In this document: positions 13,910-63,019 of the stretch, piece after piece
How the letters are laid out: every line of letters begins with the position of its first letter
Position numbering within the stretch: position 1 is the stretch's first letter
DNA from: Okamejei kenojei
Lineage: Eukaryota
Reading direction: 5' to 3'
Length of the DNA: 64,000 bases
NCBI GenBank assembly: GCA_035221665.1
Contig: CM069147.1
Span: 25,606,001 to 25,670,000 of the forward strand
Made by a program: the position numbers and the translations under genes
The notes under the pieces: generated by a model
Seen by the model: the letters and a program-made list of their open reading frames with translations, nothing else
Told to the model about the DNA's origin: nothing
Databases searched by the model: none

Positions 13910-14184
13910 GATTTTGTGGTCATCTTTACACCAGGTAAGTTCACAGTCCTTCGGGAAAAACAGAGCAGTTGTACAGTTTAGGGCCAAGGAAGGGGTGTTC
14001 ATCTGTTTAATCTTCAAAGGCGTCGGTGACACTGCAAACAATTTAAGATAAAGGAGTTAGCACCCCTATATGTTTATTTAGAAGACAATATAATCGCTTT
14101 CGAAATGGATAATACCATTGCATCTTGAGCGTTCCTTTAGTAGTAAAATATTTTAACTATGTTGTTGGTAAATCATGTACGGAC

Positions 14185-15964: not shown

Positions 15965-16469
15965 CGGGTACCATGACATAAACTATCGAACTTGTAATAA
16001 GGATCAATTAAAAGCAAATCACACCCGATATCTCAAGTAAACCAAATAATTTAATGTGCCGCAATCAGATAGTAGGCCTTTCAACAATTCTGTTCCCAAT
16101 ACAAGTGAATATGATTATTAAGGAGTTATTTCAAATTCAACCATGAAATGCCAAAGCTTACGTTTAAAGAATAAACAAGAAGATCTAATGACAGAATGCA
16201 GAATAAATTATTTATGGGGAAAAATGAAGATTCACGGGGATGGGGATATGGAAAGATGGTATGTTTCATCGACTGTGTTCATGGCGAATAGGATATATGG
16301 GTGGCGGGCATGCGGGGGGGGGGGCAGTTAATTTAGAATATGGTTATGTGGGTCAACACATCGCTTGTGTCTTATAATGGAATACATCTAGAGACGTCGA
16401 GAATTGATTAAAACAAAACATCAAATTAAAAGTGTGTATCAATAAAGAAATAACGTGAAAAGACCTATA

Positions 16470-17135
16470 TGAAGACTGGAGGATGGCTAATATTGTGGCT
16501 ATATTTGAGAAGGGCTGCAAGGAAAAGCCTGGGAACTGTAAACCAGTCTGTGGTAGGAAGGCCACTGGAAAGGATTCAGAGGGATAAACTATGTAAGCAT
16601 TTGATTAGAAAGGATCTGATCGAGGATTGTCATCATGGTTGTATATTTGAAACAACGTGTGTTACGAATCCGATTTATTTTAAAGCAACCAAAATGGATG
16701 ATTTGGGCAAAGTAGTAGACGTTGTCTGTATGGACCAGAAAAGACTTTGACACGGTTCCACATGGTGCGTTGCTCTGGAACAATAGATCCCATGTAGTCC
16801 AAGGAGAGCTCGCCACTGGGTAGAGAAATTGTTCCGTGTAAAGAAGCAAAGGGTGATGGTGGAATGTTGTATTTTGCCGACTTAATTCATGGAAAGGCAA
16901 GAGGGGAACACTTACCAATAACCTAAGGGGCATCCTCTTCATGCAGATGCTGGTGGTAAATGGAATGAGGTGCCAGATGAGGTCGCTGAGGCAGGTGCTT
17001 TTACCAGACATTTGGATGGATACAAGGGGGGGGGGGGGGGGGAGGTTTTGAGGGATATGGGCCAATTACGGTGGGACATCTTGGTCAGCATTGGAAAGTT
17101 GGGCTGAAATGTCTGTTTTCATGCTCTAGGACTAT
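16470..17135 (+). mobile_element. Old decayed CR1 fragment
   Basis: Degenerate EDWRMAN...GKVVDVVCMD motifs and CR1-type 3' UTR. Confidence 0.65.
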
Positions 17136-20100: not shown

Positions 20101-21422
20101 GATGCGATAGGGGCATCTTAAACATTTTTTTAATAGGCAAATACTGGGAATGGAAGGATATGTCTCGCAAAGAGCGGATATTAATTTAGTTTGGCATCAT
20201 ATTCGGCACCGAAATTGTGGGCCGAAGGGCCTATTCATGTTCTATGTTTAGGAGTTGTTGAATTCTTTTTTGAGCAGTTATAAGTTTCGAAATTGATGGG
20301 ATGCTTTAGGTATTTGTCGTGTTCGCAATACATGTCACGGTACTTAAACTGGACAAGGTAGGGTAGCATGTCTGTGTGTATTCAGTTGTTGCTGATGTGG
20401 GATTGGAATAGTGCGCTGTGCGGAGGGAAGAGCGTACTTAGTTGGGTGAAGCTTTCTGGCATATTTCCACCCAGAAATCCAGTGTGACGCTGACGTGTAA
20501 TTATCATTCAGACTGAAGCTTCTTCTGATTTCTTTCTCCCCTTCTTTCTCCCCCACTCGACGCTCTTCTGAGTTTCAATGAAACTCGACGTAAATTGACG
20601 GATAACGTTTTGATTAATATTCTCAATTTGCAATTTAATCATTTGAATTCTGGTACTACTCCTTTGTTTACATATATTGTGACGTTGCATTGTTCTCAGA
20701 TTTCCCCCCGTTTATAAAGTAATGGTTTTTTTTTCTTCCACCCACACTAATACGCCACCACGCACCTCACATATTCTTCCTTACGATACCTGTGAATTTC
20801 TTTAACAATTTTCATCATGAACTTTTGTTACTTCCTATAACGTTCTCGGCTGAAACTAATTTCTGTAGTCGCAGATATGTTGTGACTCGTATTTTAACAT
20901 TCATATTATTTGAAACTATGATTTCCTAAAATCACGGTAGAATAGTATTTTACACAAGATTGCGGTTAGAATATATCACTCTCACTATTCACCAAATGTT
21001 TCTTCCAACAACATACCTTTTGTTAACATTTATTAGATGGACAAGAAATAGCTACATAAATAGTCAAACATGGATATTCTGCAAAATAGCTCAATTCGTG
21101 ATATGCCAAGAATGTTCAATCATCCGGATATCACAGGTCTCGACTCGAACGCAATGTTTTTTTTTGACTAAACTACTGCAGCCACAATACTCGCTAACAT
21201 ATGATGGTTTCCATTTCATTGACTACCAACTGCAATCTTAATCTATACTCCTTTCGCTGGATGCAGTTCAGGTCCCGCCTAGAAAATTAACCCCAGACAT
21301 AAAAAAGATAACTAAATGATATGAAATTACAGAATAATGATTGTCCAAAGATCTCATGGCCCACCACGACAAACGAATTACTTAATTGGAGCAAAACCTC
21401 TAGTACAGACTAAGCAAGGGTT

Positions 21423-21798
21423 AGTTCCAACACCGTAAGTTGGAGGAACTGCACCTCATACAACACCGCAAGTTGGAGGAACAGCACCTTCCCACCTCTC
21501 CCTCAGGCCCTCGGGCCCTGGCATTCCCTCTATCTCTATCTCCCTCCCCCACACTAGTCGCACTAGCTTCTCATGTTCGCACCACAAACAGCTTACAATG
21601 GCTTGTTCCCTTTATCATCGATACTTTTTAGCATATCTTTCATTCATTGTACTTTATCTCTCCACGTCACCGTCTATATCTCTCGTTTCCCTGATCCATG
21701 ACCAGTCTGAAGAAGGGTCTCGACCCGAAACGTCGCCTATCTCCTTCGCTCCTTAGATGCTGCTGCACCCGCTGAGTTTCTCCAGCCTTTTGTGTACC
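21423..21798 (+). mobile_element. Penelope-like element fragment with minimal hammerhead motif
   Basis: Encodes RKLEEQHL (GIY-YIG C-terminus-like). CTGAAGA-AGGGTCTCGACCC-GAAA-CGTC at 21707-21734. TSD CAAGGGTT at 21415-21422 and 21799-21806. Absent from the right arm. Confidence 0.8.
21707..21738 (+). ncRNA. Putative minimal type I hammerhead ribozyme motif
   Basis: CUGAnGA core, stem II GGGU-CUCG-ACCC, GAAA, palindromic ACGU and a GUC cleavage triplet. Helix I pairing is weak in this copy. Confidence 0.55.
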
Positions 21799-21887
21799 CA
21801 AGGGTTCGTTTATCGCTGCTTTATAACTCTGTAGCACAGCATATTTCTGTGTTTCTATTGGGATACGAAACATCAAGTAAGACTCGC

Positions 21888-24253
21888 CATGTACAATAAT
21901 CATCGTGCCATTGCCTTTGGAACTGTTTCCTTTCCCGTATCTCACACTGCAATAATAGATCCCGGAGTCACGGAAACCCACGTCTAACAGATGTAATTCG
22001 TCAACTCCCTTCAGGACATTGTTCATTGTCATCCTCCTGATTGGGATCAGAGCCAAAGTCTCTTCTTGACCCTCTTTCTTCCAGTATACATCCAGCAGTG
22101 CTTTCTGATCGATGTTTTGGAAAGCATAGAAACATAGAAATTAGGTGCAGGAGTAGGCCATTCAGCCCGTTTCACGCCATTCAACTATGATCATGGCTGA
22201 TCATCCAACTCATGTATCCCGTACCTGCCTTCTCTCCATACCCTCTGATCCCCTTAGCCACAAGGGCCACATCCAACTCACTCTTAATATATAGGCCAAT
22301 GAACTGGCCTCAACTACCCTCTGTGGCAGAGAGTTCCAGAGAACCTCACCACTCTCTTGTGTGAAAAAAGTCTTTCTCATCTCGGTCTTAAAGGATTTCC
22401 CCCTTATCCTTAAGCTGTGACCCCTTGTCCTGGACTTTCCCAACATCTGGGAACAATTTCCCCTGCATCTAGCGTGTCCAACCCCTTGTAAGAATTTTGT
22501 AAGTTTCTATAAGATCCCCTCCAATCTTCCTAACTTCCAGAGAGTATAAACCGAGTCTATCCCATCTTTCTTCATAAGACATCCCGTGACAATCCCAGGA
22601 ATCAGTTCCTTGGTGAACCTTCTCTGCACTCCCTCTATGGCAATAATGTCCTTCCTCAATTTTGGCGACCAAAACTATACGCAATACTCCAGGTGTGGGT
22701 CTCACCAAGACCCTGTACAACTGAAGTAGAACCTCCCTAGCTCCTGCACTCAAATCCTTTTGCTATGAAAGAAACCATACCATTCTCTTTTTTCAACTGC
22801 CTGCTGCGTCCTGCATGCCTACTTTCATGACTGGAGTACATGACACCGCAGGTCTCGCTGCATCTCCCCTTTTCTAATCGGCCACCATTTAAATAATAGT
22901 CCCTGCTTTCCTGTTTTTGCCACCAAGTGGATAACCTCGCATTTATCCACATTATACTGCATCTGCCACCATTTGCCCACTCACACAGCCTATTCCTAGT
23001 CCACCTTGCAGTCTCCTAGCCATCTCCTCACAGCGAACACTGCCCCCCAGCTAGTGTCATCCGCAAACTTGAGATAATGCCTTCAATTCTCCTCATCCAG
23101 ATCATTAATATTTATTGTAAATAGCTGGGTCCCAGCACTGAACCCTGCGGTACCCCACTAGTTACTTTACTGCCTGCCATTGTGAAAAGGACCCGTTTAC
23201 TCCTACTCTTGCTTCCTGTTTGCCAGCCAAGTTCTCTATCCACATCAATACTGAACCCCCTCATTCCGTTCTGTGCTTTAAGTTTGTATACTAATCTCTT
23301 ATGTTGGGACCTTGTCGAAAGCCTTCTGGAAGTCCAGAATATACCACATCCACTGGTTCTCTTTATCCACGCTACTAGTTACATCCTCGAAAAATTCCAC
23401 AAGTCGTCAGACATGATTTACCTTTTGTAATCCATGCTGACTTTGTCCAATGTGTTTTCACCACTTTCCCCAAATCCGTGTGCTGCTATCCCATCTTTAA
23501 TAACTGACTCTAGCAGTTTCCCCACTACCGATGTTAGACTAACTGGTCTGTCATTCCCCGTTTTTCTCTCTCCCTCCCTTCTTAAAAGAGGGGTTACATT
23601 TGCTACCCGCCAATCCTCAGGAACTACTCCAGATCTAAAGAGTTTTGAAAGATTAACACTAATGCATCCACTATTCCTGAGAGCACTTCCTTAAGTACTC
23701 TGGGATGCGCCTATCTGGCCCTGGTGGATTTATTCGGCCATTTAATCTATTCAATTTACCCAACACTCACTTCCCGACTGACCTGGATTTCACTCAATTC
23801 CTCCTTTGACCCACAGTCCCCTGCTATTTCAGGCAGATTATTTATGGTCTTCCTTAGTGAAGACGGAACCAAAGTAGTTATTCTATTGGTCCGCCATATC
23901 CTTGTTCCCCATGATCAACTCACCTGTTTCTGACTGCAAGGGACCTACATTTGTTTTAAACTAACCTCTTTCTCTTCACATATCTATAAAAATTTTGCAG
24001 TCAGTTTTTATGTTCCCTGCAGTTTTCTTTATTTCTTTCATAATCTATTTTTCCTTCCTAATTAAGCCCTTTTGTCCTCCTCTGCTGTCTCGATTTCTCC
24101 CAGTCCTCTGGTATGCTGCTTTTTCTGGCTACTTTGTACGCATCATCCTTTGCTTTGATACTAAAGCACAGTATAAGGATACATTTTCACCTTTCACCTT
24201 CGTTACCTTATCGGGAATCTGACGCACAGTCAACGAGAAGGGCCGGTCAATTA
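21888..24253 (-). pseudogene. V exon of left copy, interrupted by CR1
   Basis: (V)IDRPFSLTVRQIPDKVTKVKGENVSLYCAF | QNIDQKALLDVYWKK...DSGIYYCSVRYGKGNSSKGNGTMIIVH. TSD AAAGCA at 22121-22126 and 24163-24168. Confidence 0.9.
22127..24162 (-). mobile_element. 5'-truncated CR1 LINE inserted in the V exon
   Basis: Closely matches 53672-55683 but with many 1-nt indels. (CATAGAAA)n tail. TSD AAAGCA. Confidence 0.93.
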
Positions 24254-24449
24254 CTGTCAGAATTAAAAAAAAACAAACGTTAAACTTGTGAAATGACAAT
24301 GAACCGATTGATAAAAATCCAAATGGCTGACATAGATCGACCGAAAAGTAAGAGTAACTAGGGTAGAAGTTTGAAAATTGTACATCTTATTCTTTTCGCG
24401 GATTGACTTTCCCCCTGTTTTTTCATTTAATAGAGATAAATATATTAAC

Positions 24450-24504
24450 CTGTGTAACCCATGTGCAGAATCGAGAGACACAGCAGCACGGCAAACATAA
24501 ACAT
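24450..24504 (-). pseudogene. Leader exon of left copy: MFMFAVLLCLSILHMGYT-G|
   Basis: Reverse-complement homologue of 44583-44637 with the same ATG and GT donor. Confidence 0.8.
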
Positions 24505-24611
24505 TCTGAACAAAGGCAGTGAAATTCAACGATGTTTGCTCTCTGACAGCGAGTCAAGCAGTGAAGCTTGTTGGCGACCGTCTTGCAGCAATACCGCGTG
24601 GCCCGAATGGT

Positions 24612-24631
24612 TCTGTTTCACTTTGACGTCA
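24612..24631 (-). promoter_or_regulatory. Putative CRE plus IRF element upstream of the left-copy ATG
   Basis: Perfect TGACGTCA (24624-24631) adjoining AAAGTGAAA on the minus strand (24616-24624). Confidence 0.4.
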
Positions 24632-25099
24632 TCGCGCTGAGAAGCACATTCAATGTCACGGAGGACACTGACGTTGCAGATATTACCTAGGGAATATGGC
24701 ACATTTTGTGTATCATGGAAAGTTTTGATTTGATGCAGCGTCGCGAATGTCACACACCCGATTAACTTTTACAGGTGCTTTAAATGATATGTCCAATGAA
24801 AAGTAGAATATCAAAGTAACGCAACGAGAAATACATAAATATAATTCGTGGAATGTGTCGAAAGAAATGTCTCGCCAGTCAAATCTAAGCGCTTTACAGA
24901 TACTGCAGCAGTTTGAATGGGAGAAGAAAACCAACGCGTAGAACAAATAATCATATACTGTACTATATCTCTGCCTTGGGGGAAAAAGACAAATTATGCT
25001 TATGGATATGCCGGTGAGTAAGGGACGGGCGCAGTAGATAGGCGAAAAGAAATACTTTCAAAACCTAAATGTTACTAAAGAGTTTAATATTTAGAGAAT

Positions 25100-44582: not shown

Positions 44583-44637
44583 ATGTTTATGTTTGCCGTG
44601 CTGCTGTGTATCTCGATCTTGCACAATAGTTACACAG
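44583..44637 (+). CDS. Leader (signal peptide) exon of VJ-C1 IgSF gene, right copy: MFMFAVLLCISILHNSYT-G|
   Basis: ATG at 44583, hydrophobic core, phase-1 GT donor (ACAG|GTTAAT) that joins in frame to the V exon. An identical-length 55-nt exon is conserved in the left arm. Confidence 0.8.
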
Positions 44638-44838
44638 GTTAATATATTTATCTCTATTAAATGAAAATAACAGGGGAAAAAAGTCAATCCGCGTAAAGTA
44701 TAAGATGTACAACTTTCAAACTTCTATCCTACTGTACTCTTACTTTTCGGTCGATCTATTTCAGCCTTTTGGATTTTTATCAATCGGTTCATTGTCATTT
44801 CACTAGTTTAACGTGTGTTTTTTTAAAAATTCTGACAG

Positions 44839-45162
44839 TAACTGACCGGCCCTTCTCGTTCAGTGTGCGTCAGGTTCCCGATAAGGTAACGAAGGTGAAA
44901 GGTGAAAATGTATCCTTATACTGTGCTTTCCAAAACTTCGATCGGAAAGCACTGCTGGATGTATACTGGAAGAAAGAGGGTCAAGAAGAGACTTTGGCTC
45001 CCACCCCAAACAGGAGGATGACAACGAACAACGTCCCGAAGGGATTTGCCGAATTACATTTGTTAGACGTGGGCTTCCGTGACTCCGGGGTCTATTATTG
45101 CAGTGTGAGAGACGGCAAAGGAAACAGTTCCGAAGGCAATGGCGCGAGGATTATTGTAAACG
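44839..45162 (+). CDS. Germline-joined VJ-type Ig V-set domain exon (NKp30/SIRP-like), right copy
   Basis: Acceptor CTGACAG|, donor |GTGAGT, 324 nt, phase 1/1. Translation (V)TDRPFSFSVRQVPDKVTKVKGENVSLYCAF...DVYWKK...AELHLLDVGFRDSGVYYCSV...SEGNGARIIVN has the B-strand Cys, C-strand Trp, DSGxYYC and a GxG J-like G strand. Confidence 0.93.
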
Positions 45163-47339
45163 GTGAGTCTTACTTGATGTTTCGTATCCCAATAGAAACA
45201 CATACATATGGTGTGCTACAGAGTTTTAAAAAATAGCGATAAACGAACCGTTGCTCAGTCTTTACTAGAGGTTTTGCTCCAATTAAGTAATTAGTTTTTC
45301 GTGATTGGTGAACCATGAGATCTTTGGACAATCATTATTCTTTCCTTTCATATCATTTAGTTATCTTTTTTTATGTCTGGGGTTAATTCTCTCGGCGGGA
45401 CCTCAACTGCATCCAGCGAAGGGAGTATAGATTAAGATTTCAGGTCAATGAAATGGAAACCATCATATGTTAGCGAGTATTGTAGCTGCAGTCGTTTAGT
45501 CAAAAAACCATTGCGTTCGCGTCGAGAACTGTGATATCCAGATGATTGAACATTCTTGGCAGATCACGAATTGAGCTATTTTGCAGAATATCCATGTTTG
45601 ACCATTTATGTAGCTATTTCTTGTCCATCTAATAAATGTTAACAAAACGTATGTTGTTGGAAGAAACATTTGGTGAATAGTGAGCGTGATATATTCTAAC
45701 CGCAATCTTGTGTAAATGACTATTCTACCATGATTTTAGGAAATCATAGTTTCAAACAAAATGAATGATAAAATACGAGTCATGACACATCTGCGACTAC
45801 AGAAATCAGTTTATGCCGATAACGTTATAGCGGAAGTAACAAAGGTTCATGATAAAAATTGATAAAGAAATTCAGAGGTATCGTAAGGAAGAATAGGTGG
45901 GGTGCGTGGTGGCGTATTAGTGTGGGTGGAAGAAAAAAACACATTACTTTATAAACGGGGGGAAATCTGAGAACAATGCAACGTCACAAAATATGTAAAC
46001 AAAGGAGATGAAAGTAGTACCAGAATTCAAATGATTAAATTGCAAATTGAGAATATTAATCAAAACGCTATCCGTCATTTTACGTCCAGTTTCATTGGAA
46101 CTCAGCAGAGCGTCGAGTGGGAGAACAGAAGCTTCAGTCTGAATGATAATTACACGTCAGCGTCATACTCGATTTCTGGGTGGAAATATGCCAGAAAACT
46201 TCACCCAACGCTCTTCCCTTCACCCAACGATCTTCCCTCCGCACAGCGCACTATTTCAATCCCACATCAGCACCTACTGAATACACACAGACACGCTACC
46301 ATACCTTGTCCAGTTTAAGTACCGTGACATGTATTGCGAACACGACAAATACCTAAAGCATCTCATCAATTTTGAAACGTATAACTGCTCAAAAAAGAAT
46401 TCAACAACTCCTAAACATAGAACATAAATAGGCTCTTCGGCCCACAATTTCGGTGCCGAATATGATGCCAAACTAAATTAATATCCGCTCTTTGCGAGAC
46501 ATATCCTTCCATTCCCTCCATTTGCCAATTTAACCATGTCTGAGATACCCATATCGTATCTGTCTTTGCAACAACGCATGATGTAGTTAAGCTGGAAAGG
46601 GTATAGAGCACAATTACGAGGATGTTGCCAGGCGCGAAGGTCTGAGCTATAGGGAGAGCCTGAGGAGGTTATGACTTGATGTCTTGCAGCGCAGGAGGGT
46701 AAGGGGTGATCTTGTTGAGGTTTAGATGAGCATGACAGGGATAAATCGGGTATATGCATCGCCTTTTACCCAGAACAGTGAAATGAAGACTATGTAAGCG
46801 AAACATTTCACCACATTAAATTACAATAACAGAGAAGTGTTCGTCGCAGTTGAAAGAGCAATTATGAGCGCGCTACCAGGAAAGCGAAATTGTCAGTCCC
46901 ATGCACCCTTTCTTTCAAGGAACGATTAAATTGCTTTCCAACAGGTGTTTATTTTATTTATTTTTCACGGTCTTGATTGACTCTGCTTCCAGCACATTTC
47001 CGATCACTACTTCAGGTTCAAGTCCAAGTTACATTTATTGTCACATGCACCAATTAGTGCAGTGAGATTTGAGCTATCATACAACCATACAAATAAAAAT
47101 AACACACTAGAAGATATAATTTAACTTGAACAACCCCCACAGCGGAATCATCGTTTCCCACTGTGAGGGAAGGCAATAATGTTCAGTCATCTTCCTCTTT
47201 GTTCACACGTGGTCGGGGCCTTCCGGCCACGGGTGAACTCCTGGTTTAAGCCCTCCGCAGTGCCGCTACGGACGGCCCGAAGTACAGGTCCTGAATCTGG
47301 ATCTGGATGCAATATGCTGACAAGCTCTAGATAGGAGCA

Positions 47340-48850
47340 TCATTCAGCACTATTATGGTGGTGGACGTGCTAGTCCAGATGGATATGCTTTTGGAGTGCA
47401 TCTTTGTATGTGCTGATGTTTTAGAGATCTCTGATGCTGGCTGGTAGGGTATTCCAATCCCTTGCTGTCTTGAAGAAAAACGAGTAAAACTGTGCTAATG
47501 AAGTGCCGTGCGGAATGAAATAATTTCCAGGTTGTTAGCTTCTAGTTGACATGCCTTGGTTATCTGGATGTGGTCCTCCATCTTTAAATCAATAGTGGTA
47601 TTATTGATCTTGTGGAATGTTGTCAGTCTGATGATCTTGCGATGAGTAGTAGGTGGATGAAGTTTAAGGTCCTTTATCATGCTGAGCTCTACCACTTGTA
47701 GTTGTTAGATATGAACCTTGCTGCTCTGTTTTGTATTGCCTGGATCTTATTGATTTTCCCTTGAGTGATAGGATCCCTCATGGAGCAGCAATATTCAACA
47801 TGTGTACATACAAGGCTTTTATATGCTTGGATCTTAACTTCTTTGGGTGCATTTTGCAGATTGCGACTAGAAAGCTGATGACACTACTGGCTTCGGCTGT
47901 TGCTCCTTCCACATGTTTGTTCCATTTCATGTTTTCAGACAAAGTAACTCCTAAGTAATTAAAACTAGAAACAGCCATTAGCTGATGTCCAGAATGTATA
48001 GGAATGATGGATTGGTTTAGATTTCCGAGTATAACGCATGACATTTCATGTTTTCTGGTTTGAACATCATTTGCCATTTCTTCTACCATCTCTCCAAAGA
48101 GTGAAGATCTTTTTGAAGCATCAGGCAATCATCATGAGATTTGATTAGTCGATAAACCATACAATCGTCGGCGAAGAGGCAGACCTTAGATGTGATGTTA
48201 TTTGGGAGACTGTTATAGTAGACTAAAAACAACAGCGGTCCCAGCACAGTGCCCTGTGGCACGTCAGAGTCGACATGGGCTGGTTTTGAGGATGTTCCCT
48301 GGACTACAACTGACTGCTCCCTCTGAGTTCAAAAGCTAGTTATCCAGGAGTGAAGTGAGCCCTCTACACCAAAGTATTTGAGATGGTGAAGAAGCCTCTG
48401 ATGTGGAACAGTGTCGAAAGCTTTTGCAAATTCTAGCACCACTGCGTCCACTTGTTTGGTTTCTTCCAGAGAGCTGAAGATTTTGTGAATTGTAGTTATC
48501 AGCTGAGCATCATATGATCGTCGGGCCCGGAAACAATGTCGCGTATGACCGAGGATGTTGTTTCTCTCCAAGTGTCCCATGATATGTCGATAGATGACGT
48601 TATCTAATAGTTTACAACAAACTGAGGTGAGCGACACCAGCCTGTAATTTGAAGGGTCAGTTCCACTCCCTTTCTTAAATAAAGCAGTGATGTTGACTTG
48701 CCTCCAATCACGAGGTGCTTCACCTCTCTGAACACTCTACGAGAAGATGATTTGCAAAATGGGTGTCACTTGTTTAAGTAACACAATTTAAGTATTCTTG
48801 GAGAGATGCCATCTGGACCAGAGGCTTTGATTGCTTAAATAGATTGATAA
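47340..48850 (-). mobile_element. Decayed divergent CR1-group LINE RT region
   Basis: SLTSVCCKLL...RSYDAQLITTIH...QVDAVVLEFAKAFDTVPHQRLL; DNA for GVPQGTVLGP-like and LFADD motifs at 48150-48270; YLGVTLSENMKWNKHV. Confidence 0.85.
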
Positions 48851-48912
48851 ACTTTCAATCTATTTAATCACTCCCCCCACCCCGCACACCCCCCCCCCCC
48901 CCCCAAGAAAAC

Positions 48913-49220
48913 GCGGCACGGCGACGTAGCGGTAGAGTTGCTGCCTCAGCGCTTGCAGCGTCGGAGATCCCCGATCGATCCTGACTACGGGTGTGGTCTG
49001 TCCGGAGAATGTACGTTCTCCGCGTGACCGCGTGAATTCTCTCCGAGATCTTCTGTTTCCTCCCACACCCCAAAGACGGACAGGTATGTTTGTAAGTTGG
49101 CTTGGTAAATGTAGAACATATCACCAGTGTGTGTCTGATGGTGTTAATATGCGGGGTTCGCTGGTTCTCGCGGAATCGATGACCCGAAGTTTCCGCACTG
49201 TATCTCTAAAATTAAAACAC
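48913..49220 (+). mobile_element. tRNA-derived V-SINE (HE1-like)
   Basis: GCGGCACGGCGACGTAGCGGTAGAG (A box-like), GATCGATCC (B box-like), central TTTCCTCCCACA V-domain-like block, (CTAAA)-type tail. Confidence 0.8.
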
Positions 49221-52200
49221 TAAAGAAAAGCAGAATCCCCATGGTATGGAGGGCGTGCTTGATGCTGGGCGCAATAAGGAGTTTATGGTCAGGGATAGCG
49301 ATTATAAGTATATGACAGGTACAAAATGATGTGGTTCAGTGAAGATATCATCACATTGGAAGAAACAAATAGCGAGGTCGTGTATTTTATAAATAGAGAG
49401 AGTTGAAGGTGTTGAGGTTCAAATGGTCCCGAGCATCACTCGGTGAATGATTGAATGTTTGCTTCAACATTTTTGTCTGTTATGATTCACATGAGTTACA
49501 TATTTTTGCTGCAGACATCTGAGTGTTGGAATCTATCCCAAAGCGTTAAGCGTGATCAACCGCCATATGTACAGAATCTGAACATATGAGCAGCAGCATA
49601 GCGGGTCTGTAGCACAGTACTCAGCAAACAAACCAAAAGAAGGTCAATAGAAAACTATATTAGTGCAAAACAAAAACAAATGCTCCAAAGTTCGGAGTAC
49701 AACAAAGACGGTTCGTATTCGATGTTTGGTTGGTGTTTGTAGTGTATAATAGCCTGATGGTTGTTGGGGGAAAAACTGTTTCTGAGCATGGAGGTCAGTG
49801 TTTTCAAATGCCTAGACCTTCTTCTCAACGGCTTGTGTGCAATTGCAGTGTGGCAAGGTTTTGTCGGGTCTTGATGATGCTGGCTACCTTTTTGGGGCAG
49901 CTTCTCCTATAGATCTCTTCGATCTTTTTGTAATTCCTTATCCTGGGTGTTCGCGTTACCGAACCAGGCCATGATGCAACCTGTTAATACGCTCTCTACC
50001 ATATATTGTAAAGGATTAAGAGTGCTTTCGATTAAAGATGTTGTCAACCAGGAAAGGGTGCAGAGAAGACTTACGAGGATGTTGTCACGACTAGTGGGTC
50101 TGAGCTGTAGGGTGAGGTGGAGTAGGCTATTCATTGATGCGCAGGAGGATGAAGTGTGATCATATGGAGGTTTATAAATTCATGAGAGGAATAGTTCCGG
50201 TAGGTGCACAGAGCCTCTTGGCCAGTGTAGGTGAATCGAGGACAAAATTACATAGGTTTAAGGTGAAGGGGAAAATATTTAAAAGAAAACTGAGGGGGAA
50301 CCTTTTCAGCAAAGGGTGATGGGTATGGAACAAACTGCCCGAGCATGTAGTTGAGACAGGGGCTATACCGAAGTTTGGACGGATATATGGATAGGACAGG
50401 TTTGGAGGGATATGGGCCAAATGCGGGCAGGTGGGACTAGTGTAGCTTGGTCATGTTCGCCGATGTGGGGAAGTTGGGCCGAAGGGCATGTTTCCACAGT
50501 GTATGACTCTATGACTCAATGACAACATATCGAATCTCCTCAATCTTCTTAGAAATTAGAAGCATTGGAGGGCTTTCATATGAATGTATGGATGTGGGGA
50601 GTTCAGGACAGATCTTCAGAAATATGCATGCCAAAAAACGTGAAGTTTTTGACTCACTCCATCACTGACCAGTCAATGAAGACAGGTTGACTATCCTTGT
50701 CCTTCCTCTCCTCAAGTCAACAATCAGCAATCTTACTGACATTGAGAGCCAGATTGTTGTTCCGGCACAATTTGATCAGATGATGGATCTCCCACCTCTA
50801 GTCTGACACATCATTAAAACAATTACCTGTAATTAGTTCATCAACGGTGGTGTAGTCTGCAAATTTACAGGTTGAGTTGGAACTGTTCCGGGTACACATC
50901 CATGGGTATTGTATGAGCACACAGCCTTGAGGTGCCACTGTGCTGATGGTTAGCGAGGAGGAAGTGTGAGGAATGTGACAGCTTCGCGGCATTGCTCAGT
51001 TCCAATCTGGCCTTTTGGGTACATGCTGTTAGAACATTATGGATTATCTCCAGTGATTTCTTCTTTCCTCTGTGTTATTTTCTCTTATAGATGTAGCTTC
51101 TTATTCTTGCGTATGGAGTGCACAGCCTAAAGTTGTAGGACAACTTGTTCTATTTGATATTATTTGATTGTGCACGCCAGGTTGATTGTATTCGTCGAAA
51201 CAGGGCGCACCACGTGAAGGTTGCAATCTCCCACAACCTAGATGTAGCAAGCTGATGTCAAAGACCAATTGGATCACAGCCAATACATCACTCATGCTAA
51301 TTGCACAAAAATCGTCCTGCTCCCTCTCTCTCATCCCACGCTTGCTGTAGTCAAGAAGTAATTCTAAATTTCATTTATCTGGATCCTCATTGTACGTTCC
51401 GTTTGTTGGAACAAATTACAGTTTCCTTTGGGTGTCATTTTCCACAGGTTCAGTGTGAAGCCATTTCTCTACTGCACCTGTTGAGTCATTAAAGGCTACA
51501 TATAGAGTAGTATTTTCGTGCTATTGTATTATATCTGTACCACATCATACCAAGCCAATATTTGTGCCTGTGCACGGAGTTGCAGCCTTACAGCGACAGA
51601 GGCCCGCGTTGGATCCTAGCTACAGGTGCTTGCTGTATGGAGTTTGTACATTTTGATAATAATAAGAGGGCGCCTTCATTTCACCCAGTTGTTATATCAT
51701 TGGAGGGAAGCAATTACGTTGGTTGGTATGATAGTGTAGGACCTATAATTATCCTCATCTTTTTACATAAGCTAATGTGAGATGTAATGTCTTAATTTCT
51801 CAATTGTCCATCGTTAGTCCACTTGGGTAGATAACCCTCTAATCGACCTGAAAGATTATGATTTACTTAATCAGCCAATTTCTATACGTCATCATTCCTA
51901 GCTCAGACCTCGACCTATTACCCTTGATCTATTTTTGATCTATTGCTACTTGGTCATAATTTGATATATGTTCCTGAATATATTTGGCATTGGGTTGACA
52001 CCTGTGCAAGAAATGAATTTAGAGGGAAATTAAAGGAAAATGAAAAGCGGAATCTTCGCAGGTTTTCTTCAAGAGATATAATGGGGCGATGGCGGCTGTT
52101 AACTGCTCACCAGTTTTTTGACTTCACAACAGATTTAGCCGACAGTTATACTGTGCAGTAAACAACTTTTGTTTTTTGTTAGTATATTTTTGTATAGTTG

Positions 52201-53671
52201 TATCTATCTACTACATAGGTATCAATTATTTCATTAGTCATAACATACCTTTTGTTTATGACAATCTTATTCAATCTTAATACAAGTCAAAAACAATACA
52301 TGGGCATCTTGATATTATTCTACCTCACCTTTTAGGTGGACCGTGCCACCATCCCTTCGCCGAGCGATCCATAAGCTCCCCATTTACTGCAACGTTTCTA
52401 TGCTACAAACGGCAGGGGGTGAGGGTGGTCTTCTGAAACACACTGCTGAGAGAAAGAAGCTTCCTGAACTGCATCTACTATTTCATCTTTACATTTACCA
52501 TCCACCCTTCAACACATTCCCAGACAAGAGATACTACGTCGAATCTTACTTTGCCGATTCCCACGAACCTCTTCTGTAGCTGGAGTCCAGCTGCTGGACA
52601 ATGAGAGATGCCAATTGGCACACACAAACACCCTGCCATTACCTTGTTCATTTCCAATCAAAATTAAGTAAGAAAGGATATTTTCTTCCACAACACGTTT
52701 TACAAAAATAAACGCTATCATTGAATACAGTCCTAGAGCACGAAAACAGACATTTCAGCAGAACTTTGCAATGCTGACCGAGAAGTCCCACCGTAATTGG
52801 CCCATATCCCTCAAAACCTTTCCCCCCTTGTATCCGTCCAAATGTCTGGTAAAATCACCTGCCTCAGCGACCTCATCTGGCACCTCATTCCATATACCCA
52901 CCAGCATCTGCATGAAAAGGATGCCACTTAGGTTCTTGGTAAGTGTTCCCCTCTCCCCTTCCCATGATTTCAGTCCACAAAATACAACATTCTACCATCA
53001 CCCTTTGCTTCCTTACATGGAGCCATTTCTCTACCCATAGTAAATCGTTTTGAAAACATACGGGACACACACAAATTCCCTGGCGGGCCGATGACAAGTG
53101 TGCATGACAACGAACAATTTTATCTCCTCCCACTACACCCTCCTTGACAACAAGAAGCACGTTTTATTTATTACCGTCTGGCTGCCTGCGTAACGCACAC
53201 AACCTCGCACACACAAAAACACCAGATAATCTGTAAACTGCTTTAACTGAAGATGGACACAAAAAGCTGGAGTAACTCAGCAGAACAGGCAGCATCTCTG
53301 GAGAGAAGGACTGCGTGACGTTTTAGGGTCGAAACCATTCTTCAGACCTGAAGACTACGTCTGAAAGGTCTCGACCCGAAATGCCACTCATTCCTTCTCT
53401 CCAGAGATGGTGCCTGTCTCACTGAGACACACCAGCATTGTGTGTCCATCTTCGGTGTGACAGTTGTCTCATTTAATCGGCTTCATGTATTGTGCGCATG
53501 GAAGAGACGCTTTACATGCCGCTTGCATCTATTCATTTGCGAGAGAGGGATGGACTGGATGTGACCACTAGCGAAAGCAAAGACATAGTTAGTACAGGGA
53601 AATAATCCCACTACTTAATTAACCAGGTTCCCGAATGTTAGATCTATTTATACATGTAACATTTTTGTTTT

Positions 53672-56502
53672 TAGAAACATAGAAACATAGAAATTAGGTG
53701 CAGGAGTAGGCCATTCAGCCCTTCGAGCCTGCACCGCCATTCAATATGATCATGGCTGATCATCCAACTCAGTATCCCGTACCTGCCTTCTCTCCATACC
53801 CTCTGATCCCCTTAGCCACAAGGGCCACATCCAACTCCCTCTTAAATATAGCCAATGAACTGGCCTCAACTACCCTCTGTGGCAGAGAGTTCCAGAGACT
53901 CACCACTCTCTGTGTGAAAAAAGTCTTTCTCATCTCGGTCTTAAAGGATTTCCCCCTTATCCTTAAGCTGTGACCCCTTGTCCTGGACTTCCCCAACATC
54001 GGGAACAATCTTCCTGCATCTAGCCTGTCCAACCCCTTAAGAATTTTGTAAGTTTCTATAAGATCCCCTCTCAATCTCCTAAATTCCAGAGAGTATAAAC
54101 CGAGTCTATCCAGTCTTTCTTCATAAGACAGTCCTGACATCCCAGGAATCTGTCTGGTGAACCTTCTCTGCACTCCCTCTATGGCAATAATGTCCTTCCT
54201 CAGATTTGGAGACCAAAACTGTACGCAATACTCCAGGTGTGGTCTCACCAAGACCCTGTACAACTGAAGTAGAACCTCCCTGCTCCTGTACTCAAATCCT
54301 TTTGCTATGAAAGCTAACATACCATTCGCTTTTTTTCACTGCCTGCTGCACCTGCATGCCTACTTTCAATGACTGATGTACCATGACACCCAGGTCTCGC
54401 TGCATCTCCCCTTTTCCTAATCGGCCACCATTTAAATAATAGTCTGCTTTCCTGTTTTTGCCACAAAAGTGGATAACCTCACATTTATCCACATTATACT
54501 GCATCTGCCAAACATTTGCCCACTCACCCAGCCTATCCAAGTCACCTTGCAGTCTCCTAGCATCCTCCTCACAGCTAACACTGCCCCCCAGCTTAGTGTC
54601 ATCCGCAAACTTGGAGATATTGCCTTCAATTCCCTCATCCAGATCATTAATATATATTGTAAATAGCTGGCGTCCCAGCACTGAGCCCTGCGGTACCCCC
54701 ACTAGTCACTGCCTGCCATTGTGAAAAGGACCCGTTTACTCCTACTCTTTGCTTCCTGTTTGCCAGCCAGTTCTCTATCCACATCAATACTGAACCCCTA
54801 ATACCGTATGCTTTAAGTTTGTATACTAATCTCTTATGTGGGACCTTGTCGAAAGCCTTCTGGAAGTCCAGATATACCACATCCACTGGTTCTCCCTTAT
54901 CCACGCTACTAGTTACATCCTCGAAAAATTCCACAAGATTCGTCAGACATGATTTACCTTTCGTAAATCCATGCTGACTTTGTCCAATGATTTCACCACT
55001 TTCCAAATGTGCTGCTATCCCATCTTTAATAACTGACTCTAGCAGTTTCCCCACTACCGATGTTAGACTAACTGGTCTGTAATTCCCCGTTTTCTCTCTC
55101 CCTCCCTTCTTAAAAAGAGGGGTTACATTTGCTACCCGCCAATCCTCAGGAACTACTCCAGAATCTAAAGAGTTTTGAAAGATTATCACTAATGCATCCA
55201 CTATTTCCTGAGCTACTTCCTTAAGTACTCTGGGATGCAGCCTATCTGGCCCTGGGGATTTATCGGCCTTTAATCTATTCAATTTACCCAACACCACTTC
55301 CCGACTGACCTGGATTTCACTCAATTCCTCCTTTGACCCACAGTCCCTGCTATTTCCGGCAGATTATATATGTCTTCCTTAGTGAAGACGGAACCAAAGT
55401 AGTTATTCAATTGGTCCGCCATATGCTTGTTCCCCATGATCAACTCACCTGTTTCTGACTGCAAGGGACCTACATTTGTTTTAACTAACCTCTTTCTCTT
55501 CACATATCTATAAAAACTTTTGCAGTCAGTTTTTATGTTCCCTGCCAGTTTCCTTTCATGATCTATTTTTCCTTTCCTAATTAAGCCCTTTGTCCTCCTC
55601 TGCTGGTCTCTGAATTTCTCCCAGTCCTCTGGTATGCTGCTTTTTCTGGCTACTTTGTATGCATCATCCTTTGCTTTGATACTATCCCTGATTTCTCTTG
55701 TTATCCACGGATGCACTACCTTCCCCGATTTATTCTTTTGCCAAACTGGGATGAACAATTTTTGTAGTTCATCCATGCAGTCTTTAAATGTCTTCCATTG
55801 TATATCCACCGTCAACCCTTTTAGAATTAATTGCCAGTCAATCTTGGCCAATTCACGTCTCATACCCTCAAAGTTACCTTTCTTTAAGTTCAGAACCATT
55901 GTTTCTGAATTAACAATGTCACTCTCCATCCTAATGAAGAACTCAACCATATTATGGTCACTCTTGTCCAAGGGGGCACGTACAACAAGACGGCTAACTA
56001 CCCCTTCCTCATTACTCAAAACCCAGTCTAAAATAGCCTGCTCTCTCGTTGGTTCCTCTACATGTTGATTTAGATAACTATCCCGCATACATTCCAAAAA
56101 ATCCTCTTCCTCAGCACCCCTGCCAATTTGATTAACCCAATCTATATGTAGATTGAAGTCACCCATTATAACTGTTTTGCCTTTGTCGCATGCATTTCTA
56201 ATTTCCTGTTTGATACCATCCCCAACTTCTCTGCTACTGTTAGGTGGCCTGTACACAACACCCACCAGCGTTTTCTGCCCCTTAGTGTTTTGTAGCTCTA
56301 CCCATACCGAATCCACATCCTCCAAGCTAATGTCCTTCCTTTCCATTGCGTTAATCTCCTCTCTAACCAGCAACGCTACCCCACCTCCTTTTCCTTTCTC
56401 TCTATCCCTCCTGAATATTGAATATCCCTGGATGTTCAGCTCTCAGCCTACGTCACCCTGGAGCCATGTCTCCGTGATGCCAACTATATCATAATCATTA
56501 AT
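53672..56502 (-). mobile_element. Young 5'-truncated CR1 LINE (ORF2 EN+RT almost complete, three frameshifts) in the V-C1 intron
   Basis: Consecutive ORFs 56373-55321, 55324-54647, 54702-54292 and 54320-53769 with EN and RT motifs. Absent from the left arm (empty site near 14637). Confidence 0.95.
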
Positions 56503-57103
56503 ATCAATGTAACTCTTTTTTGAATTTTAATGCCGAGTTAAAACCCCGTCCCGTGGGAGGGGCTTTGGTAACTGGTTTCATAGTGCCTTCATTGTTGGTC
56601 AGTGCCGTCCCTTCACATGGACCGCTCTCAGTGCCAGTTTTCGCAACTTCCATAGCCGCTCTATATAAGTGCAGTCAGACGTGATGGACGCGGTGGTCTG
56701 GACCTATCGCTGGCAAGTCTGGCCCCTGTGACGTCATGTCCGTTATTTGATTTTTCGGTTGAGTGGCCATTTGGTTACTTGGCTTGTGGGCGACGCAGCC
56801 TTTCGGTTAGTTGGATTTTAGGCGTCAGGCCCTTTCAGTTAGTTTGCATTGAGGCGTACCACCCATTGGTTCGTTAGCGTTTCGGCTTCGTACCCTTTCG
56901 GCTATTTGGCTCCCACTTCTTTGCTTCGGCTTCTCGTCCTAAGACGCCACGTCCGCACACGATTTCCCAACAACATTGTTAAAATAGTTTACTAATAAAG
57001 GAACGCTCAAGAAGTTATGGTATAATCCATTTCGAAAGCGATTATATTGTCTTCTAAATAAGCATATAGGGGAGCTAACTCTTTTATCTTAAATTGTTTG
57101 CAG

Positions 57104-57385
57104 TGTCCCCGATGCCTTTGAAGATTAAACAGATGAACACTCCTTCCCTGGCCCTAAACTGTACAACAGCACCGTTTTTCCCGGAGGACTGTGAACTTAC
57201 CTGGTATAAAGATGACCACAAAATCACTTCTGGAATAAGTACCACTAAAATACGGAACGACGAGGGATTATACCTTGCTTCCAGCTTCCTGCATGTAGTG
57301 GATAGCCGATCGGTTTATAGTTGCAACGTGTCTCACGCCACCCTCCTGGTTCCGACCGTTGAAACTCACAGAGTTCTTGGAATGG
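57104..57385 (+). CDS. Ig C1-set constant domain exon, right copy
   Basis: Acceptor TTTGCAG|, donor |GTATGA, 282 nt, phase 1/1. LNCTTAPFFPEDCELTWYKD and YSCNVSHATL match the C1-set hallmarks CxxxxF(Y/F)P...W and YxCxVxH. Confidence 0.92.
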
Positions 57386-61897: not shown

Positions 61898-61989
61898 ACA
61901 TAAAGTATGAAGGAGAAATAAAGGAAAATGTTTACGATAATAATCAGGCAGAATATATAAAGAGTAAAACAAAGTTCAGTCCTCCTTAA
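61898..61989 (+). other. Candidate tyrosine-rich cytoplasmic terminal exon (D)IKYEGEIKENVYDNNQAEYIKSKTKFSPP*
   Basis: Phase-1 AG (weak pyrimidine tract) compatible with the candidate TM donor. Hydrophilic, three Tyr including a YxN motif. Confidence 0.2.
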
Positions 61990-62660: not shown

Positions 62661-63019
62661 ACTAAAAATGTGGAACCCATTCTGTAATTCCCTGTTCATG
62701 TAATCCGATTATTCAATGAAGATAACCTCTGAAAAATTATAATATTCAGCTTTTATTTTCCCTTTAGGAATTAGCGTTAAACTCGTCTGCTTTCTGGCGG
62801 GTGGATTTGCCATATGCGTGCTAATTATTCTAGCGCTGGCATTTTTTGCCAGGCGGTGCAAATTACACAGTACTGAAGGTAAGAAATGAGTTGATTCTTG
62901 TCCGAAATTAGTGATACAAGGAACTGCAGATGCAAAGCACAAAGTGCTTGAGTAACTCGGCCGTTTGACAGCATCTGGGGATACAGTGGATAGGGTATTT
63001 TTAATGGTTGAGTCACATT

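What the first reader, a model, noticed from the sequence alone, without database searches (positions are those of the whole stretch)
44583..57385. Non-rearranging antigen-receptor-like gene: germline-joined NKp30-like VJ domain spliced to a C1-set domain
Seen: L, V and C1 exons are all open and joined by phase-1 introns. The V exon already contains the J-like G strand (SEGNGARIIVN) and has no flanking RSS. Its C-terminal half (AELHLLDVGFRDSGVYYCSV...GNGARIIV) resembles NKp30/NCR3 as I recall it (AELHIRDV...DASIYVCRV...GNGTRLVV). Known: NKp30 is V-only. C1-set domains are limited to a few jawed-vertebrate families (Ig, TCR, MHC/b2m, tapasin, SIRP and some others). A joined VJ plus C1 gene is the architecture proposed for the pre-RAG precursor of Ig/TCR, and VJ-C1/PRARP-type genes have been described in tetrapods. 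Inference: this may be an uncharacterised cartilaginous-fish VJ-C1 immune receptor family.
Basis: partly seen in the sequence, partly recalled or inferred. Interest (0 to 1): 0.9.

Follow-up and report, generated by a model that had tools for sequence, protein, structure and literature searches.

The report
Shark-type VJ-C1 membrane receptor gene
This is the front part of a non-rearranging immune-receptor gene (leader, antibody-like V domain with built-in J, one C1 domain, membrane anchor). It belongs to a large gene family found in sharks, rays and chimaeras, whose members public databases name inconsistently and which no paper I could search describes.

Summary
Leader (44583-44637), V (44839-45163) and C1 (57104-57385) exons are open, have GT-AG borders, are all phase 1, and score as V-set and C1-set. 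I add a fourth exon: an uncharged transmembrane exon at 62768-62878, also phase 1. The V exon carries its own J-like G strand and has no RSS.

The gene is one member of a multigene family. Searches found that family only in Chondrichthyes: at least 14 species of sharks, rays and a chimaera. Its layout is VJ-C1-TM with either a multi-tyrosine ITIM-type tail or a short N-x-x-R activating form. Automatic names for its members disagree (SIRP-alpha-like, tapasin-related, NCR3LG1-like, MHC II beta-like, Ig lambda-like).

By sequence the family lies equally far from Ig lambda, UrIg2 and SIRP-alpha. In trees it is its own clade (C1 100/99, V 98/88). It lies nearest true SIRP, weakly supported, and is not nested inside it.

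The NKp30 likeness is generic. NKp30 is the Foldseek top hit, but it ties with VNAR, TCR V-alpha and PD-1.

Expression, the cytoplasmic tail (beyond the window) and synteny could not be tested. UrIg and UrIg2 already fill the "non-rearranging VJ-C1 in sharks" niche. This is therefore a new, SIRP-like variant, not a new category.

The parts
44583..44637 (+). Leader exon (L1): ATG plus 18 codons (MFMFAVLLCISILHNSYT) plus 1 nt; split leader, phase 1; donor GT at 44638
   Evidence: Sequence read. Same length and the same ...YT end as the N-terminus of family protein P0005, with 7 of 18 residues identical. Conserved at 92% nt in the paralogue.
44638..44838 (+). Short leader intron (201 nt), GT..AG, as in Ig/TCR-type V genes
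   Evidence: The split-leader layout is also described for UrIg2 in PMC12227049.
44839..45163 (+). VJ exon: V-set Ig domain with germline-joined J-like G strand (GNGARIIV); phase 1 in, phase 1 out; no RSS
   Evidence: Pfam V-set 4.9e-11. Family V HMM 137 bits. AlphaFold pLDDT 82.8. RSS scan negative. C28, W43 and C87 invariant, and G99, G101 and V106 nearly invariant, in the family.
45164..57103 (+). V-C1 intron, 11.9 kb, filled with retroelement debris, including a LINE endonuclease/RT on the minus strand at 53769-56373
   Evidence: The paralogue's equivalent intron is about 7.9 kb.
57104..57385 (+). C1-set Ig domain exon (…YSCNVSH… hallmark); phase 1 in, phase 1 out
   Evidence: Pfam C1-set 2.5e-13. 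Family C1 HMM 122.5 bits. AlphaFold pLDDT 90.0. Best folds are MHC class II beta-2 domains, TM 0.78-0.87. Sister to the Mobula protein P0005 at 97/95.
62768..62878 (+). Transmembrane exon: (G)ISVKLVCFLAGGFAICVLIILALAFFARRCKLHSTE(G); uncharged membrane core; acceptor AG 62766-67, donor GT 62879-80; phase 1 in and out. Cytoplasmic exons lie beyond the window.
   Evidence: tblastn of family proteins P0005, P0168, P0140, P0151, P0160 and P0145 hits this spot with their TM region (E 0.002-0.2). Splice sites read. The frame joins the C1 exon's last G to GA, giving Gly.

Best explanation
The locus encodes the ectodomain and membrane anchor of a type I membrane receptor of the immunoglobulin superfamily. 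The parts are a split leader, one V domain with a germline-joined J strand, one C1-set domain and an uncharged transmembrane helix. It does not rearrange.

It is one copy of a multigene family found across cartilaginous fishes. Family members come in two forms. One has a long tail with three or four ITIM-type tyrosines. The other has a short tail and an N-x-x-R transmembrane motif. That makes it a paired inhibitory/activating receptor family, built like SIRP (and used like teleost NITR), but with a single C1 domain.

Inferred mechanism: the fast-evolving V domain binds a still unknown ligand. The C1 domain acts as a stalk and possibly as a pairing surface. In this copy the uncharged TM predicts an inhibitory tail that, once phosphorylated, would recruit SHP-type phosphatases.

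Shown here: exons, domain types, absence of RSS, family membership and the family's clade status. Inferred: splicing in vivo, the tail of this copy, the signalling, and any ligand.
For: - Exons, phases and domains.
- No RSS.
- Family: the C1 exon finds V-C1-TM proteins of Mobula, Heterodontus, Heptranchias, Scyliorhinus, Chiloscyllium, Carcharodon, Cetorhinus, Amblyraja, Callorhinchus and others at 45-55% identity.
- There is a clear score gap to everything else: family C1 domains score 40 bits or more, all others 37 or less.
- The full alignment shows our V and C1 fitting the family consensus, and shows the conserved tail motifs xxYAxL, TVYAQ, LTYAxxDL and xEYAxI.
- Short N-x-x-R forms: P0170 and P0017.
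- Careful trees: family C1 clade 100/99 and V clade 98/88; the window's domains are sister to Mobula P0005 (C1 97/95, V 94/67).
- The TM exon matches family TMs and has no charged core residue.
- Models are confident (pLDDT 82.8 and 90.0), with a V-type and a C1-type fold.
Against: - There is no expression evidence. No RNA run holds the V exon. The four runs laid on 57000-62950 covered only repeats and gave zero depth on the C1 exon.
- The cytoplasmic exons lie outside the window, so the inhibitory tail of this copy is unverified.
- The TM match is short (E 0.002 at best).
- The neighbouring paralogue is a pseudogene, so this copy could also be decaying outside the exons seen.
- The apparent restriction to Chondrichthyes rests on word-indexed searches, which miss distant relatives.
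Confidence: 0.65

Rival explanations
1. It is a bona fide SIRP: the cartilaginous-fish (co-)orthologue of the SIRP-alpha/beta family of bony vertebrates, having lost or never gained the second C1 domain.
For: - NCBI names many members SHPS-1/SIRP-like.
- The family V HMM's best non-family hits in the sample are coelacanth SIRP V domains at 32-40 bits, against 26 or less for other V domains. Those coelacanth proteins and P0091 are true SIRPs (2wng at 2.5e-32 and 6.3e-43).
- The family profile aligns along human SIRP-alpha V-C1 (57.8 bits) and d3, including the VPPT linker (43.6 bits).
- In the careful C1 tree the family sits on the SIRP/NCR3LG1-like side of a 93/66 split.
- Forcing family plus sarcopterygian SIRP C1 into one clade gave a tree 8 lnL units better than the free quick search (p-AU 0.71). 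Forcing family plus IgL-like gave a tree 13.7 units worse (p 0.27).
- The four-tyrosine tail of relatives resembles SIRP-alpha as I recall it.
Against: - There is one C1 exon, not two, between V and TM.
- A family member scores the same against Ig lambda (54.7), UrIg2 (53.2) and SIRP-alpha (53.2). A true coelacanth SIRP scores 115.6 against SIRP-alpha and 62.5 against Ig.
- SIRP is not among the top 60 PDB hits of our V exon or the top 50 Foldseek hits.
- The family is a separate clade, never nested in SIRP.
- The activating forms use N-x-x-R, not the Lys/DAP12 pairing of SIRP-beta.
- A 2026 survey dates the SIRP family to Tetrapoda (PMC13262535).
Confidence: 0.25
2. It is an NKp30 (NCR3) homologue that carries an added C1 domain.
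For: - NKp30 (3noi) is the Foldseek top hit of the V model (E 2.2e-9, TM 0.76, 23% identity).
- phmmer aligns NKp30 over nearly the whole V exon at E 0.002.
Against: - The margins are negligible. VNARs follow at 3.8e-9.
- VIA-align ties NCAM, VNAR, TCR V-alpha and PD-1 at Z 14-14.8, and no NKp30 entry is among the 50 rows shown.
- By sequence, VNAR (1e-5) and TCR-mu rank above NKp30.
- NKp30 is V-only with a charged TM. Here there is a C1 domain and an uncharged TM.
- Shark NCR3 is already known as a separate MHC-linked VJ gene (PMC12227049).
Confidence: 0.04
3. It is a relative of the antigen-receptor lineage proper: a germline-joined IgL-type gene or a UrIg/UrIg2 paralogue.
For: - Ig lambda V-C and UrIg2 are the top profile hits in PDB (63.9 and 55.4 bits per stretch).
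- Some members are auto-named Ig lambda-like.
- The layout has a split leader, VJ and C1.
- The AU test does not reject a family + IgL-like clade (p 0.27).
Against: - It has a TM exon, and its relatives have ITIM tails.
- It has a single C domain, against three or more in UrIg and UrIg2.
- The white-shark UrIg2 orthologue P0001 (9dmx at 4.8e-86) and the IgL-like and IgH C domains fall on the other side of the 93/66 split from the family.
- Per-domain scores to these groups are 37 bits or less, against 40-100 within the family.
Confidence: 0.05
4. This particular copy is a dead or silent gene: intact-looking exons in a cluster that is turning over, with nothing functional made.
For: - The neighbouring inverted paralogue is clearly broken by insertions in both Ig exons.
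- The introns are full of retroelements.
- No transcript evidence was found.
Against: - Four consecutive exons are open with canonical splice sites and all structural residues intact.
- C1 dN/dS against the paralogue is 0.25, which indicates constraint.
Confidence: 0.15

Closest known systems
SIRP family (SIRP-alpha/beta/gamma; SHPS-1)
   Same: - Non-rearranging V domain with a J-like strand, followed by C1-set domain(s), then TM.
- Inhibitory members have a multi-tyrosine tail, alongside activating short-tailed members (paired receptors).
- Nearest true relatives in the V tree and the C1 tree, weakly supported.
- The family profile aligns along human SIRP-alpha.
   Different: - One C1 domain instead of two.
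- Sequence similarity to SIRP is no greater than to Ig lambda or UrIg2.
- It forms a separate clade.
- Activating forms carry N-x-x-R rather than the TM lysine that pairs with DAP12.
- CD47 binding is unknown.
UrIg / UrIg2 (elasmobranch non-rearranging Ig-like genes; PDB 9dmx)
   Same: Cartilaginous-fish genes with a split leader, a single-exon VJ domain and C1-type domains, without RSS (PMC12227049).
   Different: - UrIg has three C domains and is secreted. UrIg2 has nine to eleven C domains.
- Neither has ITIM-type tails.
- Their C domains cluster with Ig C domains, away from this family.
Teleost novel immune-type receptors (NITR)
   Same: Large, fast-evolving clusters of non-rearranging VJ-containing type I receptors, with inhibitory (ITIM) and activating (charged TM) members (PMC7916673).
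   Different: - The second NITR domain, where present, is not C1-set.
- NITRs are known only from bony fish.
- No sequence relationship was tested here, because no NITR sequence was at hand.
NKp30 / NCR3
   Same: Compact V-type domain with a germline J-like strand. Top Foldseek hit of the V model.
   Different: V-only, with a charged TM and activating function. The similarity is generic.
PRARP (chicken and other non-mammalian VJ receptors)
   Same: Non-rearranging VJ domain, TM and ITIM. This is from my own recollection of Fu et al. 2019, which is not held in the library.
   Different: As I recall, PRARPs are V-C2-TM or V-TM. Here the second domain is C1-set (C1-set 2.5e-13 against C2-set_2 4.1e-5).

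Membership tests
Chondrichthyan VJ-C1-TM receptor family (unnamed; NCBI models variously called SHPS-1-like, tapasin-related-like, NCR3LG1-like) | V and C1 domains fall inside the family clade and fit its consensus | tested here: met
   V is 47-52% and C1 50-56% identical to members. Family HMMs score 137 and 122 bits. Clade support is C1 100/99 and V 98/88, with the window's domains sister to Mobula P0005.
Chondrichthyan VJ-C1-TM receptor family (unnamed; NCBI models variously called SHPS-1-like, tapasin-related-like, NCR3LG1-like) | Architecture: leader, one VJ domain, one C1 domain, TM | tested here: met
   Four phase-1 exons in that order. No further Ig exon on the + strand.
Chondrichthyan VJ-C1-TM receptor family (unnamed; NCBI models variously called SHPS-1-like, tapasin-related-like, NCR3LG1-like) | Cytoplasmic tail with ITIM-type tyrosines, or a short tail with an N-x-x-R TM | not testable with these tools
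   The tail exons lie beyond base 64000. The uncharged TM predicts the inhibitory form. Tails were seen only in homologues.
SIRP | Ectodomain of one V-set and two C1-set domains | tested here: not met
   Only one C1 exon lies between V and TM. Most family proteins are V-C1. The definition is taken from PMC12975943.
SIRP | V domain clearly most similar to SIRP d1 | tested here: not met
   SIRP is absent from the top 60 PDB hits of the V exon. Family member P0161 ties Ig lambda, UrIg2 and SIRP-alpha at 53-55 bits. Coelacanth SIRP scores 115.6 bits to SIRP-alpha.
SIRP | Phylogenetic placement within or sister to SIRP | tested here: inconclusive
   The family is not nested in SIRP. Sister placement is compatible with the data (AU p 0.71, constrained tree 8 lnL better) but weakly supported (93/66 and 91/84). 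Mammalian SIRP, NCR3, tapasin and PRARP were not in the sample.
SIRP | ITIM tail that recruits SHP-1/2; CD47 as ligand | not testable with these tools
   The tail is outside the window.
NKp30 / NCR3 | Single V-type domain only, charged TM residue, MHC linkage | tested here: not met
   A C1 exon is present and the TM core is uncharged. Linkage is not testable in this window.
NKp30 / NCR3 | Specific V-domain similarity | tested here: inconclusive
   NKp30 is the Foldseek top hit by a hair. phmmer gives E 2e-3, below VNAR and TCR-mu. In VIA-align the 50 rows shown tie at Z 13.9-14.8, and NKp30 is not among them.
UrIg / UrIg2 | VJ followed by three or more C1-type domains; C domains orthologous to UrIg C1-C3 | tested here: not met
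   There is a single C1 domain. The UrIg2 orthologue P0001 has its C domains on the Ig side of the tree, apart from the family.
Rearranging or germline-joined Ig light chain / TCR | RSS-flanked V and J segments, or a secreted V-J-C light chain without TM | tested here: not met
   No RSS near V. A TM exon is present. The C1 clade is separate from IgL-like C domains, although a forced clade is not rejected (p 0.27).
PRARP | V-C2-TM or V-TM layout (from my recollection of Fu et al. 2019) | tested here: not met
   The second domain scores C1-set 2.5e-13 against C2-set_2 4.1e-5 and folds like MHC II beta-2. No PRARP sequence was available for direct comparison.

The most novel reading that the evidence does not exclude
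The family could be a surviving membrane-bound lineage of the pre-RAG VJ-C1 receptor stock. On this reading it would be the sister of SIRP and a close cousin of the gene that became Ig/TCR. It would retain a single C1 domain that can pair as Ig/TCR/MHC C1 domains do, and would already be wired to ITIM/FcR-gamma-type signalling. That would give the hypothetical "VJ-C1-TM ancestor" a living, testable representative in every cartilaginous fish.
Probability: 0.12. Interest if true: 0.85.

Novelty: new variant of a known kind. Interest (0 to 1): 0.55.

Why it matters
C1-set domains occur in only a few jawed-vertebrate families, all tied to adaptive immunity. Non-rearranging VJ-C1 genes are the proposed raw material for antigen receptors.

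This finding points to a large chondrichthyan-wide family of VJ-C1-TM paired receptors. By sequence the family lies equally far from Ig lambda, UrIg2 and SIRP, and databases label it five different ways.

It would add a third non-rearranging VJ-C1 lineage in sharks beside UrIg and UrIg2. It could push the SIRP-type inhibitory receptor design back to the base of jawed vertebrates. It would also give cartilaginous fish a counterpart to teleost NITRs. A practical consequence is that the automatic names of these genes should not be trusted in comparative studies.

Tried and rejected
**Expression**
- The look-up of sequencing runs on the V exon found only DNA-type holders.
- Read laying of X19-X22 on 57000-62950 covered only intronic repeats. 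Depth on the C1 exon was zero and no C1-TM joint was seen. These runs are probably DNA or too shallow, so nothing follows either way.

**Joined model**
- As the operators instructed, the joined L+V+C1 protein was never built or searched. Every search used single exons by reference or natural database proteins.

**Reference sequences**
- Three word-indexed protein searches (P0007, alignment A1, coelacanth P0197 region 120-450) returned only chondrichthyan or coelacanth proteins. Mammalian SIRP, NCR3, tapasin, NCR3LG1, PRARP and NITR sequences therefore could not be put in the trees.

**Loci of homologues**
I could not check exon structure or synteny of homologues, or build V-only profiles by reference.

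**AU tests**
- Family plus all 15 proteins auto-named SIRP-like was rejected (p 0.021). The SIRP-named set alone is rejected just as strongly (p 0.022), so that result reflects mis-named proteins, not the family.

**A corrected label**
- I first labelled a V cluster "UrIg2-like". The PDB search showed it is VH of a heavy chain (P0215), so I dropped the label.

**Second C1 or other Ig exon between C1 and TM**
- None was found.

**Literature**
- Searches for a description of the family found none. Fu et al. 2019 and Flajnik et al. 2023 are not held.

**Assembly gap**
- The 500-N gap at 32178-32677 was left untouched.


Full report
**What is in the sequence**

- The leader starts at the ATG at 44583, encodes 18 residues plus one base, and ends at a GT donor at 44638.
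- After a 201-nt intron, the V exon runs from 44839 (AG at 44837-38 behind a T-rich tract) to 45163 (G|GTGAGT).
- The C1 exon runs from 57104 (TTTGCAG|) to 57385 (G|GTATGA).
- Every junction is phase 1 and every exon is open.

Pfam scores the V exon as V-set (4.9e-11) and the C1 exon as C1-set (2.5e-13), both above the curated cut-offs.

The V exon reads straight through ...DSGVYYCSVRDGKGNSSEGNGARIIVN into the donor, so the J-like G strand is part of the germline exon.

A scan for heptamer-spacer-nonamer signals found none near the V exon. It found two weak sites in the whole window, against about one expected by chance.

**A fourth exon**

tblastn with full-length relatives hit 62764-62886 with their transmembrane segments.

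The sequence shows a clean exon at 62768-62878:
- The acceptor is TTTTCCCTTTAG| and the donor is G|GTAAGA, with phase 1 on both sides.
- The last G of the C1 exon completes a glycine codon.
- It encodes ISVKLVCFLAGGFAICVLIILALAFFARRCKLHSTE.
- The membrane core has no charged residue.

A six-frame scan with family HMMs shows one V (137 bits) and one C1 (122 bits) on the + strand and nothing else between C1 and TM. The gene is therefore L-VJ-C1-TM, and its cytoplasmic exons lie past the end of the window.

**V and C1 as one gene**

I could not show splicing directly. Three observations support a single unit:
- An inverted copy on the minus strand (24798 down to 3403) is about 90% identical, introns included, and keeps the same L-V-C1 order.
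- All related proteins have V followed by C1.
- The exon phases fit.

The 11.9-kb V-C1 intron is long because of retroelement insertions, among them a LINE endonuclease/RT at 53769-56373.

**What family it belongs to**

A full HMMER scan of 1.84 billion representative proteins with the C1 exon gave, as best single-domain hits, 45-55% identical proteins of 230-490 residues from cartilaginous fishes.

Their names in the sources disagree: [quoted passage not shown], "signal-regulatory protein beta-1-like", "tapasin-related protein-like", "NCR3 ligand 1-like", "CD276 homolog", "H-2 class II beta chain-like", "Ig lambda-1 light chain-like", or uncharacterized.

The species include Mobula, Hemitrygon, Amblyraja, Leucoraja, Heterodontus, Heptranchias, Scyliorhinus, Hemiscyllium, Chiloscyllium, Stegostoma, Carcharodon, Cetorhinus and Callorhinchus.

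Best-domain scores to our C1 exon are 40-100 bits inside this set and 37 or less for every other protein.

Our V exon is 47-52% identical to the same proteins.

In the alignment both exons fit the family consensus: YWWK, DSGVYYC, NGxGTxLIV, VPPTPLKI, CxTAxFFPE, LTWYKNG, EGLYxVSS, VYTCxVSH.

Full-length members continue into a TM and a tail with conserved xxYAxL, TVYAQ, LTYAxxDL and xEYAxI motifs. Others end shortly after a TM that carries N-x-x-R (P0170, P0017). That is the pattern of a paired inhibitory/activating receptor family.

**Relation to known families**

Sequence scores do not single out a parent family:
- The family profile scores 63.9 bits against an Ig lambda V-C, 57.8 + 43.6 against human SIRP-alpha (V-d2, and d3 with its VPPT linker), and 55.4 against UrIg2.
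- A single member (P0161) ties all three at 53-55 bits.
- By contrast, a true SIRP from coelacanth scores 115.6 bits to human SIRP-alpha and 62.5 to Ig.

So the family fails the simple test for being a SIRP.

Trees say a little more. For them I used sequences whose identity I checked against PDB: P0200 and P0091 are SIRP, P0001 is UrIg2 and P0215 is a VH heavy chain.
- The family C1 domains form a clade (100/99). They lie on the same side of a 93/66 split as the sarcopterygian SIRP C1 domains and a tetrapod SIRP-/NCR3LG1-like group, away from IgH, IgL-like and UrIg2 C domains.
- The family V domains (98/88) group at 91/84 with SIRP V and one VH cluster.
- Forcing family plus sarcopterygian SIRP C1 into one clade gave a better tree than the free quick search (p-AU 0.71).
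- Forcing family plus IgL-like cost 13.7 lnL (p 0.27).

SIRP is therefore the best candidate for nearest relative. The family is not nested in SIRP, and the support is modest. Mammalian SIRP, NCR3, tapasin, NCR3LG1 proper, PRARP and NITR were not available to me as sequences, so this phylogeny is incomplete.

**The NKp30 idea**
- The AlphaFold model of the V exon (pLDDT 82.8) has NKp30 (3noi) as its Foldseek top hit: E 2.2e-9, TM 0.76, 23% identity. Shark VNARs follow at 3.8e-9.
- VIA-align puts NCAM Ig1, VNAR, TCR V-alpha and PD-1 level at Z 14-14.8.
- By sequence, NKp30 is at E 2e-3, below VNAR and TCR-mu.

The V domain is a compact V type with a short C'-C'' region. Its likeness to NKp30 is real but not specific. 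The C1 domain and the uncharged TM are not NKp30 features.

The C1 model (pLDDT 90.0) superposes best on MHC class II beta-2 domains (TM 0.78-0.87). That confirms a genuine C1-set fold and explains some of the odd automatic names.

**Likely function**

Shown: a non-rearranging VJ-C1-TM gene that belongs to a chondrichthyan paired-receptor family.

Inferred:
- This copy is of the inhibitory type, because its TM is uncharged.
- Its tail, like those of its relatives, would recruit SHP phosphatases.
- The V domain binds the ligand.
- The C1 domain is a stalk and perhaps a pairing surface.

Against the neighbouring pseudogene, V has dN/dS 0.93 (20 non-synonymous and 6 synonymous changes) and C1 has 0.25 (7 and 8). 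This fits a V domain under relaxed or diversifying selection on a conserved stalk. One partner is a pseudogene and the counts are small, so this is only suggestive.

**Novelty**

Published non-rearranging VJ-C1 genes of elasmobranchs are UrIg and UrIg2 (PMC12227049, PMC10751288). Neither paper mentions this family, and their text does not mention SIRP.

A 2026 survey dates the SIRP family to Tetrapoda (PMC13262535).

Six literature searches found no description of a shark VJ-C1-TM-ITIM family. The library lacks most subscription journals, and two key J Immunol papers were not held.

Gene models are public, so the sequences themselves are not new. What appears undescribed is the family as such, together with its position between SIRP, IgL and UrIg2.

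**Limits**
- No expression evidence could be obtained.
- The tail of this gene lies outside the window. Earlier unchecked notes of this scan place a four-tyrosine tail about 0.8 kb beyond the end. One of them starts at 62768, which matches my TM exon.
The window's V and C1 are sister to manta-ray proteins, which suggests an elasmobranch, possibly a batoid.

Noticed in passing
window 24798..3403, minus strand (V pieces 24248-24147 and 22131-21889; C1 pieces 14029-13874 and 8534-8373): This is an inverted, head-to-head paralogue of the L-V-C1 unit, about 90% identical in nucleotides, introns included. An insertion of about 2 kb splits its V exon at the first Ig cysteine (YCAF becomes FYAF). An insertion of about 5.4 kb splits its C1 exon. 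It is a pseudogene.
   Followed up: partly
window 44841-45162 vs 24248-21889, and 57106-57384 vs 14029-8373: Between the intact gene and its pseudogene copy, the V exon has dN/dS 0.93 (20 non-synonymous, 6 synonymous changes). The C1 exon has 0.25 (7 and 8). V diverges by amino-acid change while C1 is conserved. The counts are small and one partner is a pseudogene.
   Followed up: yes
window 53769-56373, minus strand: A LINE-type retroelement sits in the V-C1 intron. It has an endonuclease ORF (Exo_endo_phos_2, 2.3e-11) and RT ORFs (RVT_1, 6e-18) in adjacent frames. More RT fragments lie at 9153-9692 (minus strand), and by ORF translation only (no Pfam test) at 47778-48637 (minus strand) and 62429-62665 (plus strand).
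   Followed up: partly
proteins P0170 (Heptranchias) and P0017 (Chiloscyllium), family members from other species: These are short-tailed family members. Their TM carries N-x-x-R (NFCRFLLGL, NIFRLILGI), the motif of FcR-gamma-coupled activating receptors. The family is therefore a paired inhibitory/activating set.
   Followed up: partly
proteins P0001, P0215, P0091, P0135, P0056: Automatic names around this family mislead:
- P0001, "titin-like" from Carcharodon, is a UrIg2 orthologue (9dmx at 4.8e-86).
- P0215, "titin-like" from Mobula, is a VH-bearing heavy chain.
- P0091, unnamed, is a true SIRP.
- The C1 domains of alligator "SHPS-1-like" P0135 group with turtle "NCR3LG1-like" P0056, not with sarcopterygian SIRP.
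   Followed up: yes
window 32178-32677: A 500-N assembly gap lies between the two gene copies. It was left as it is.
   Followed up: no
window 57104-57385 (C1 exon): There is an extra cysteine in the C1 domain (FFPEDCELTW) beside the two canonical ones. The pseudogene copy and Heptranchias P0161 (EECNLTW) share it. It may be a free or interchain cysteine.
   Followed up: no
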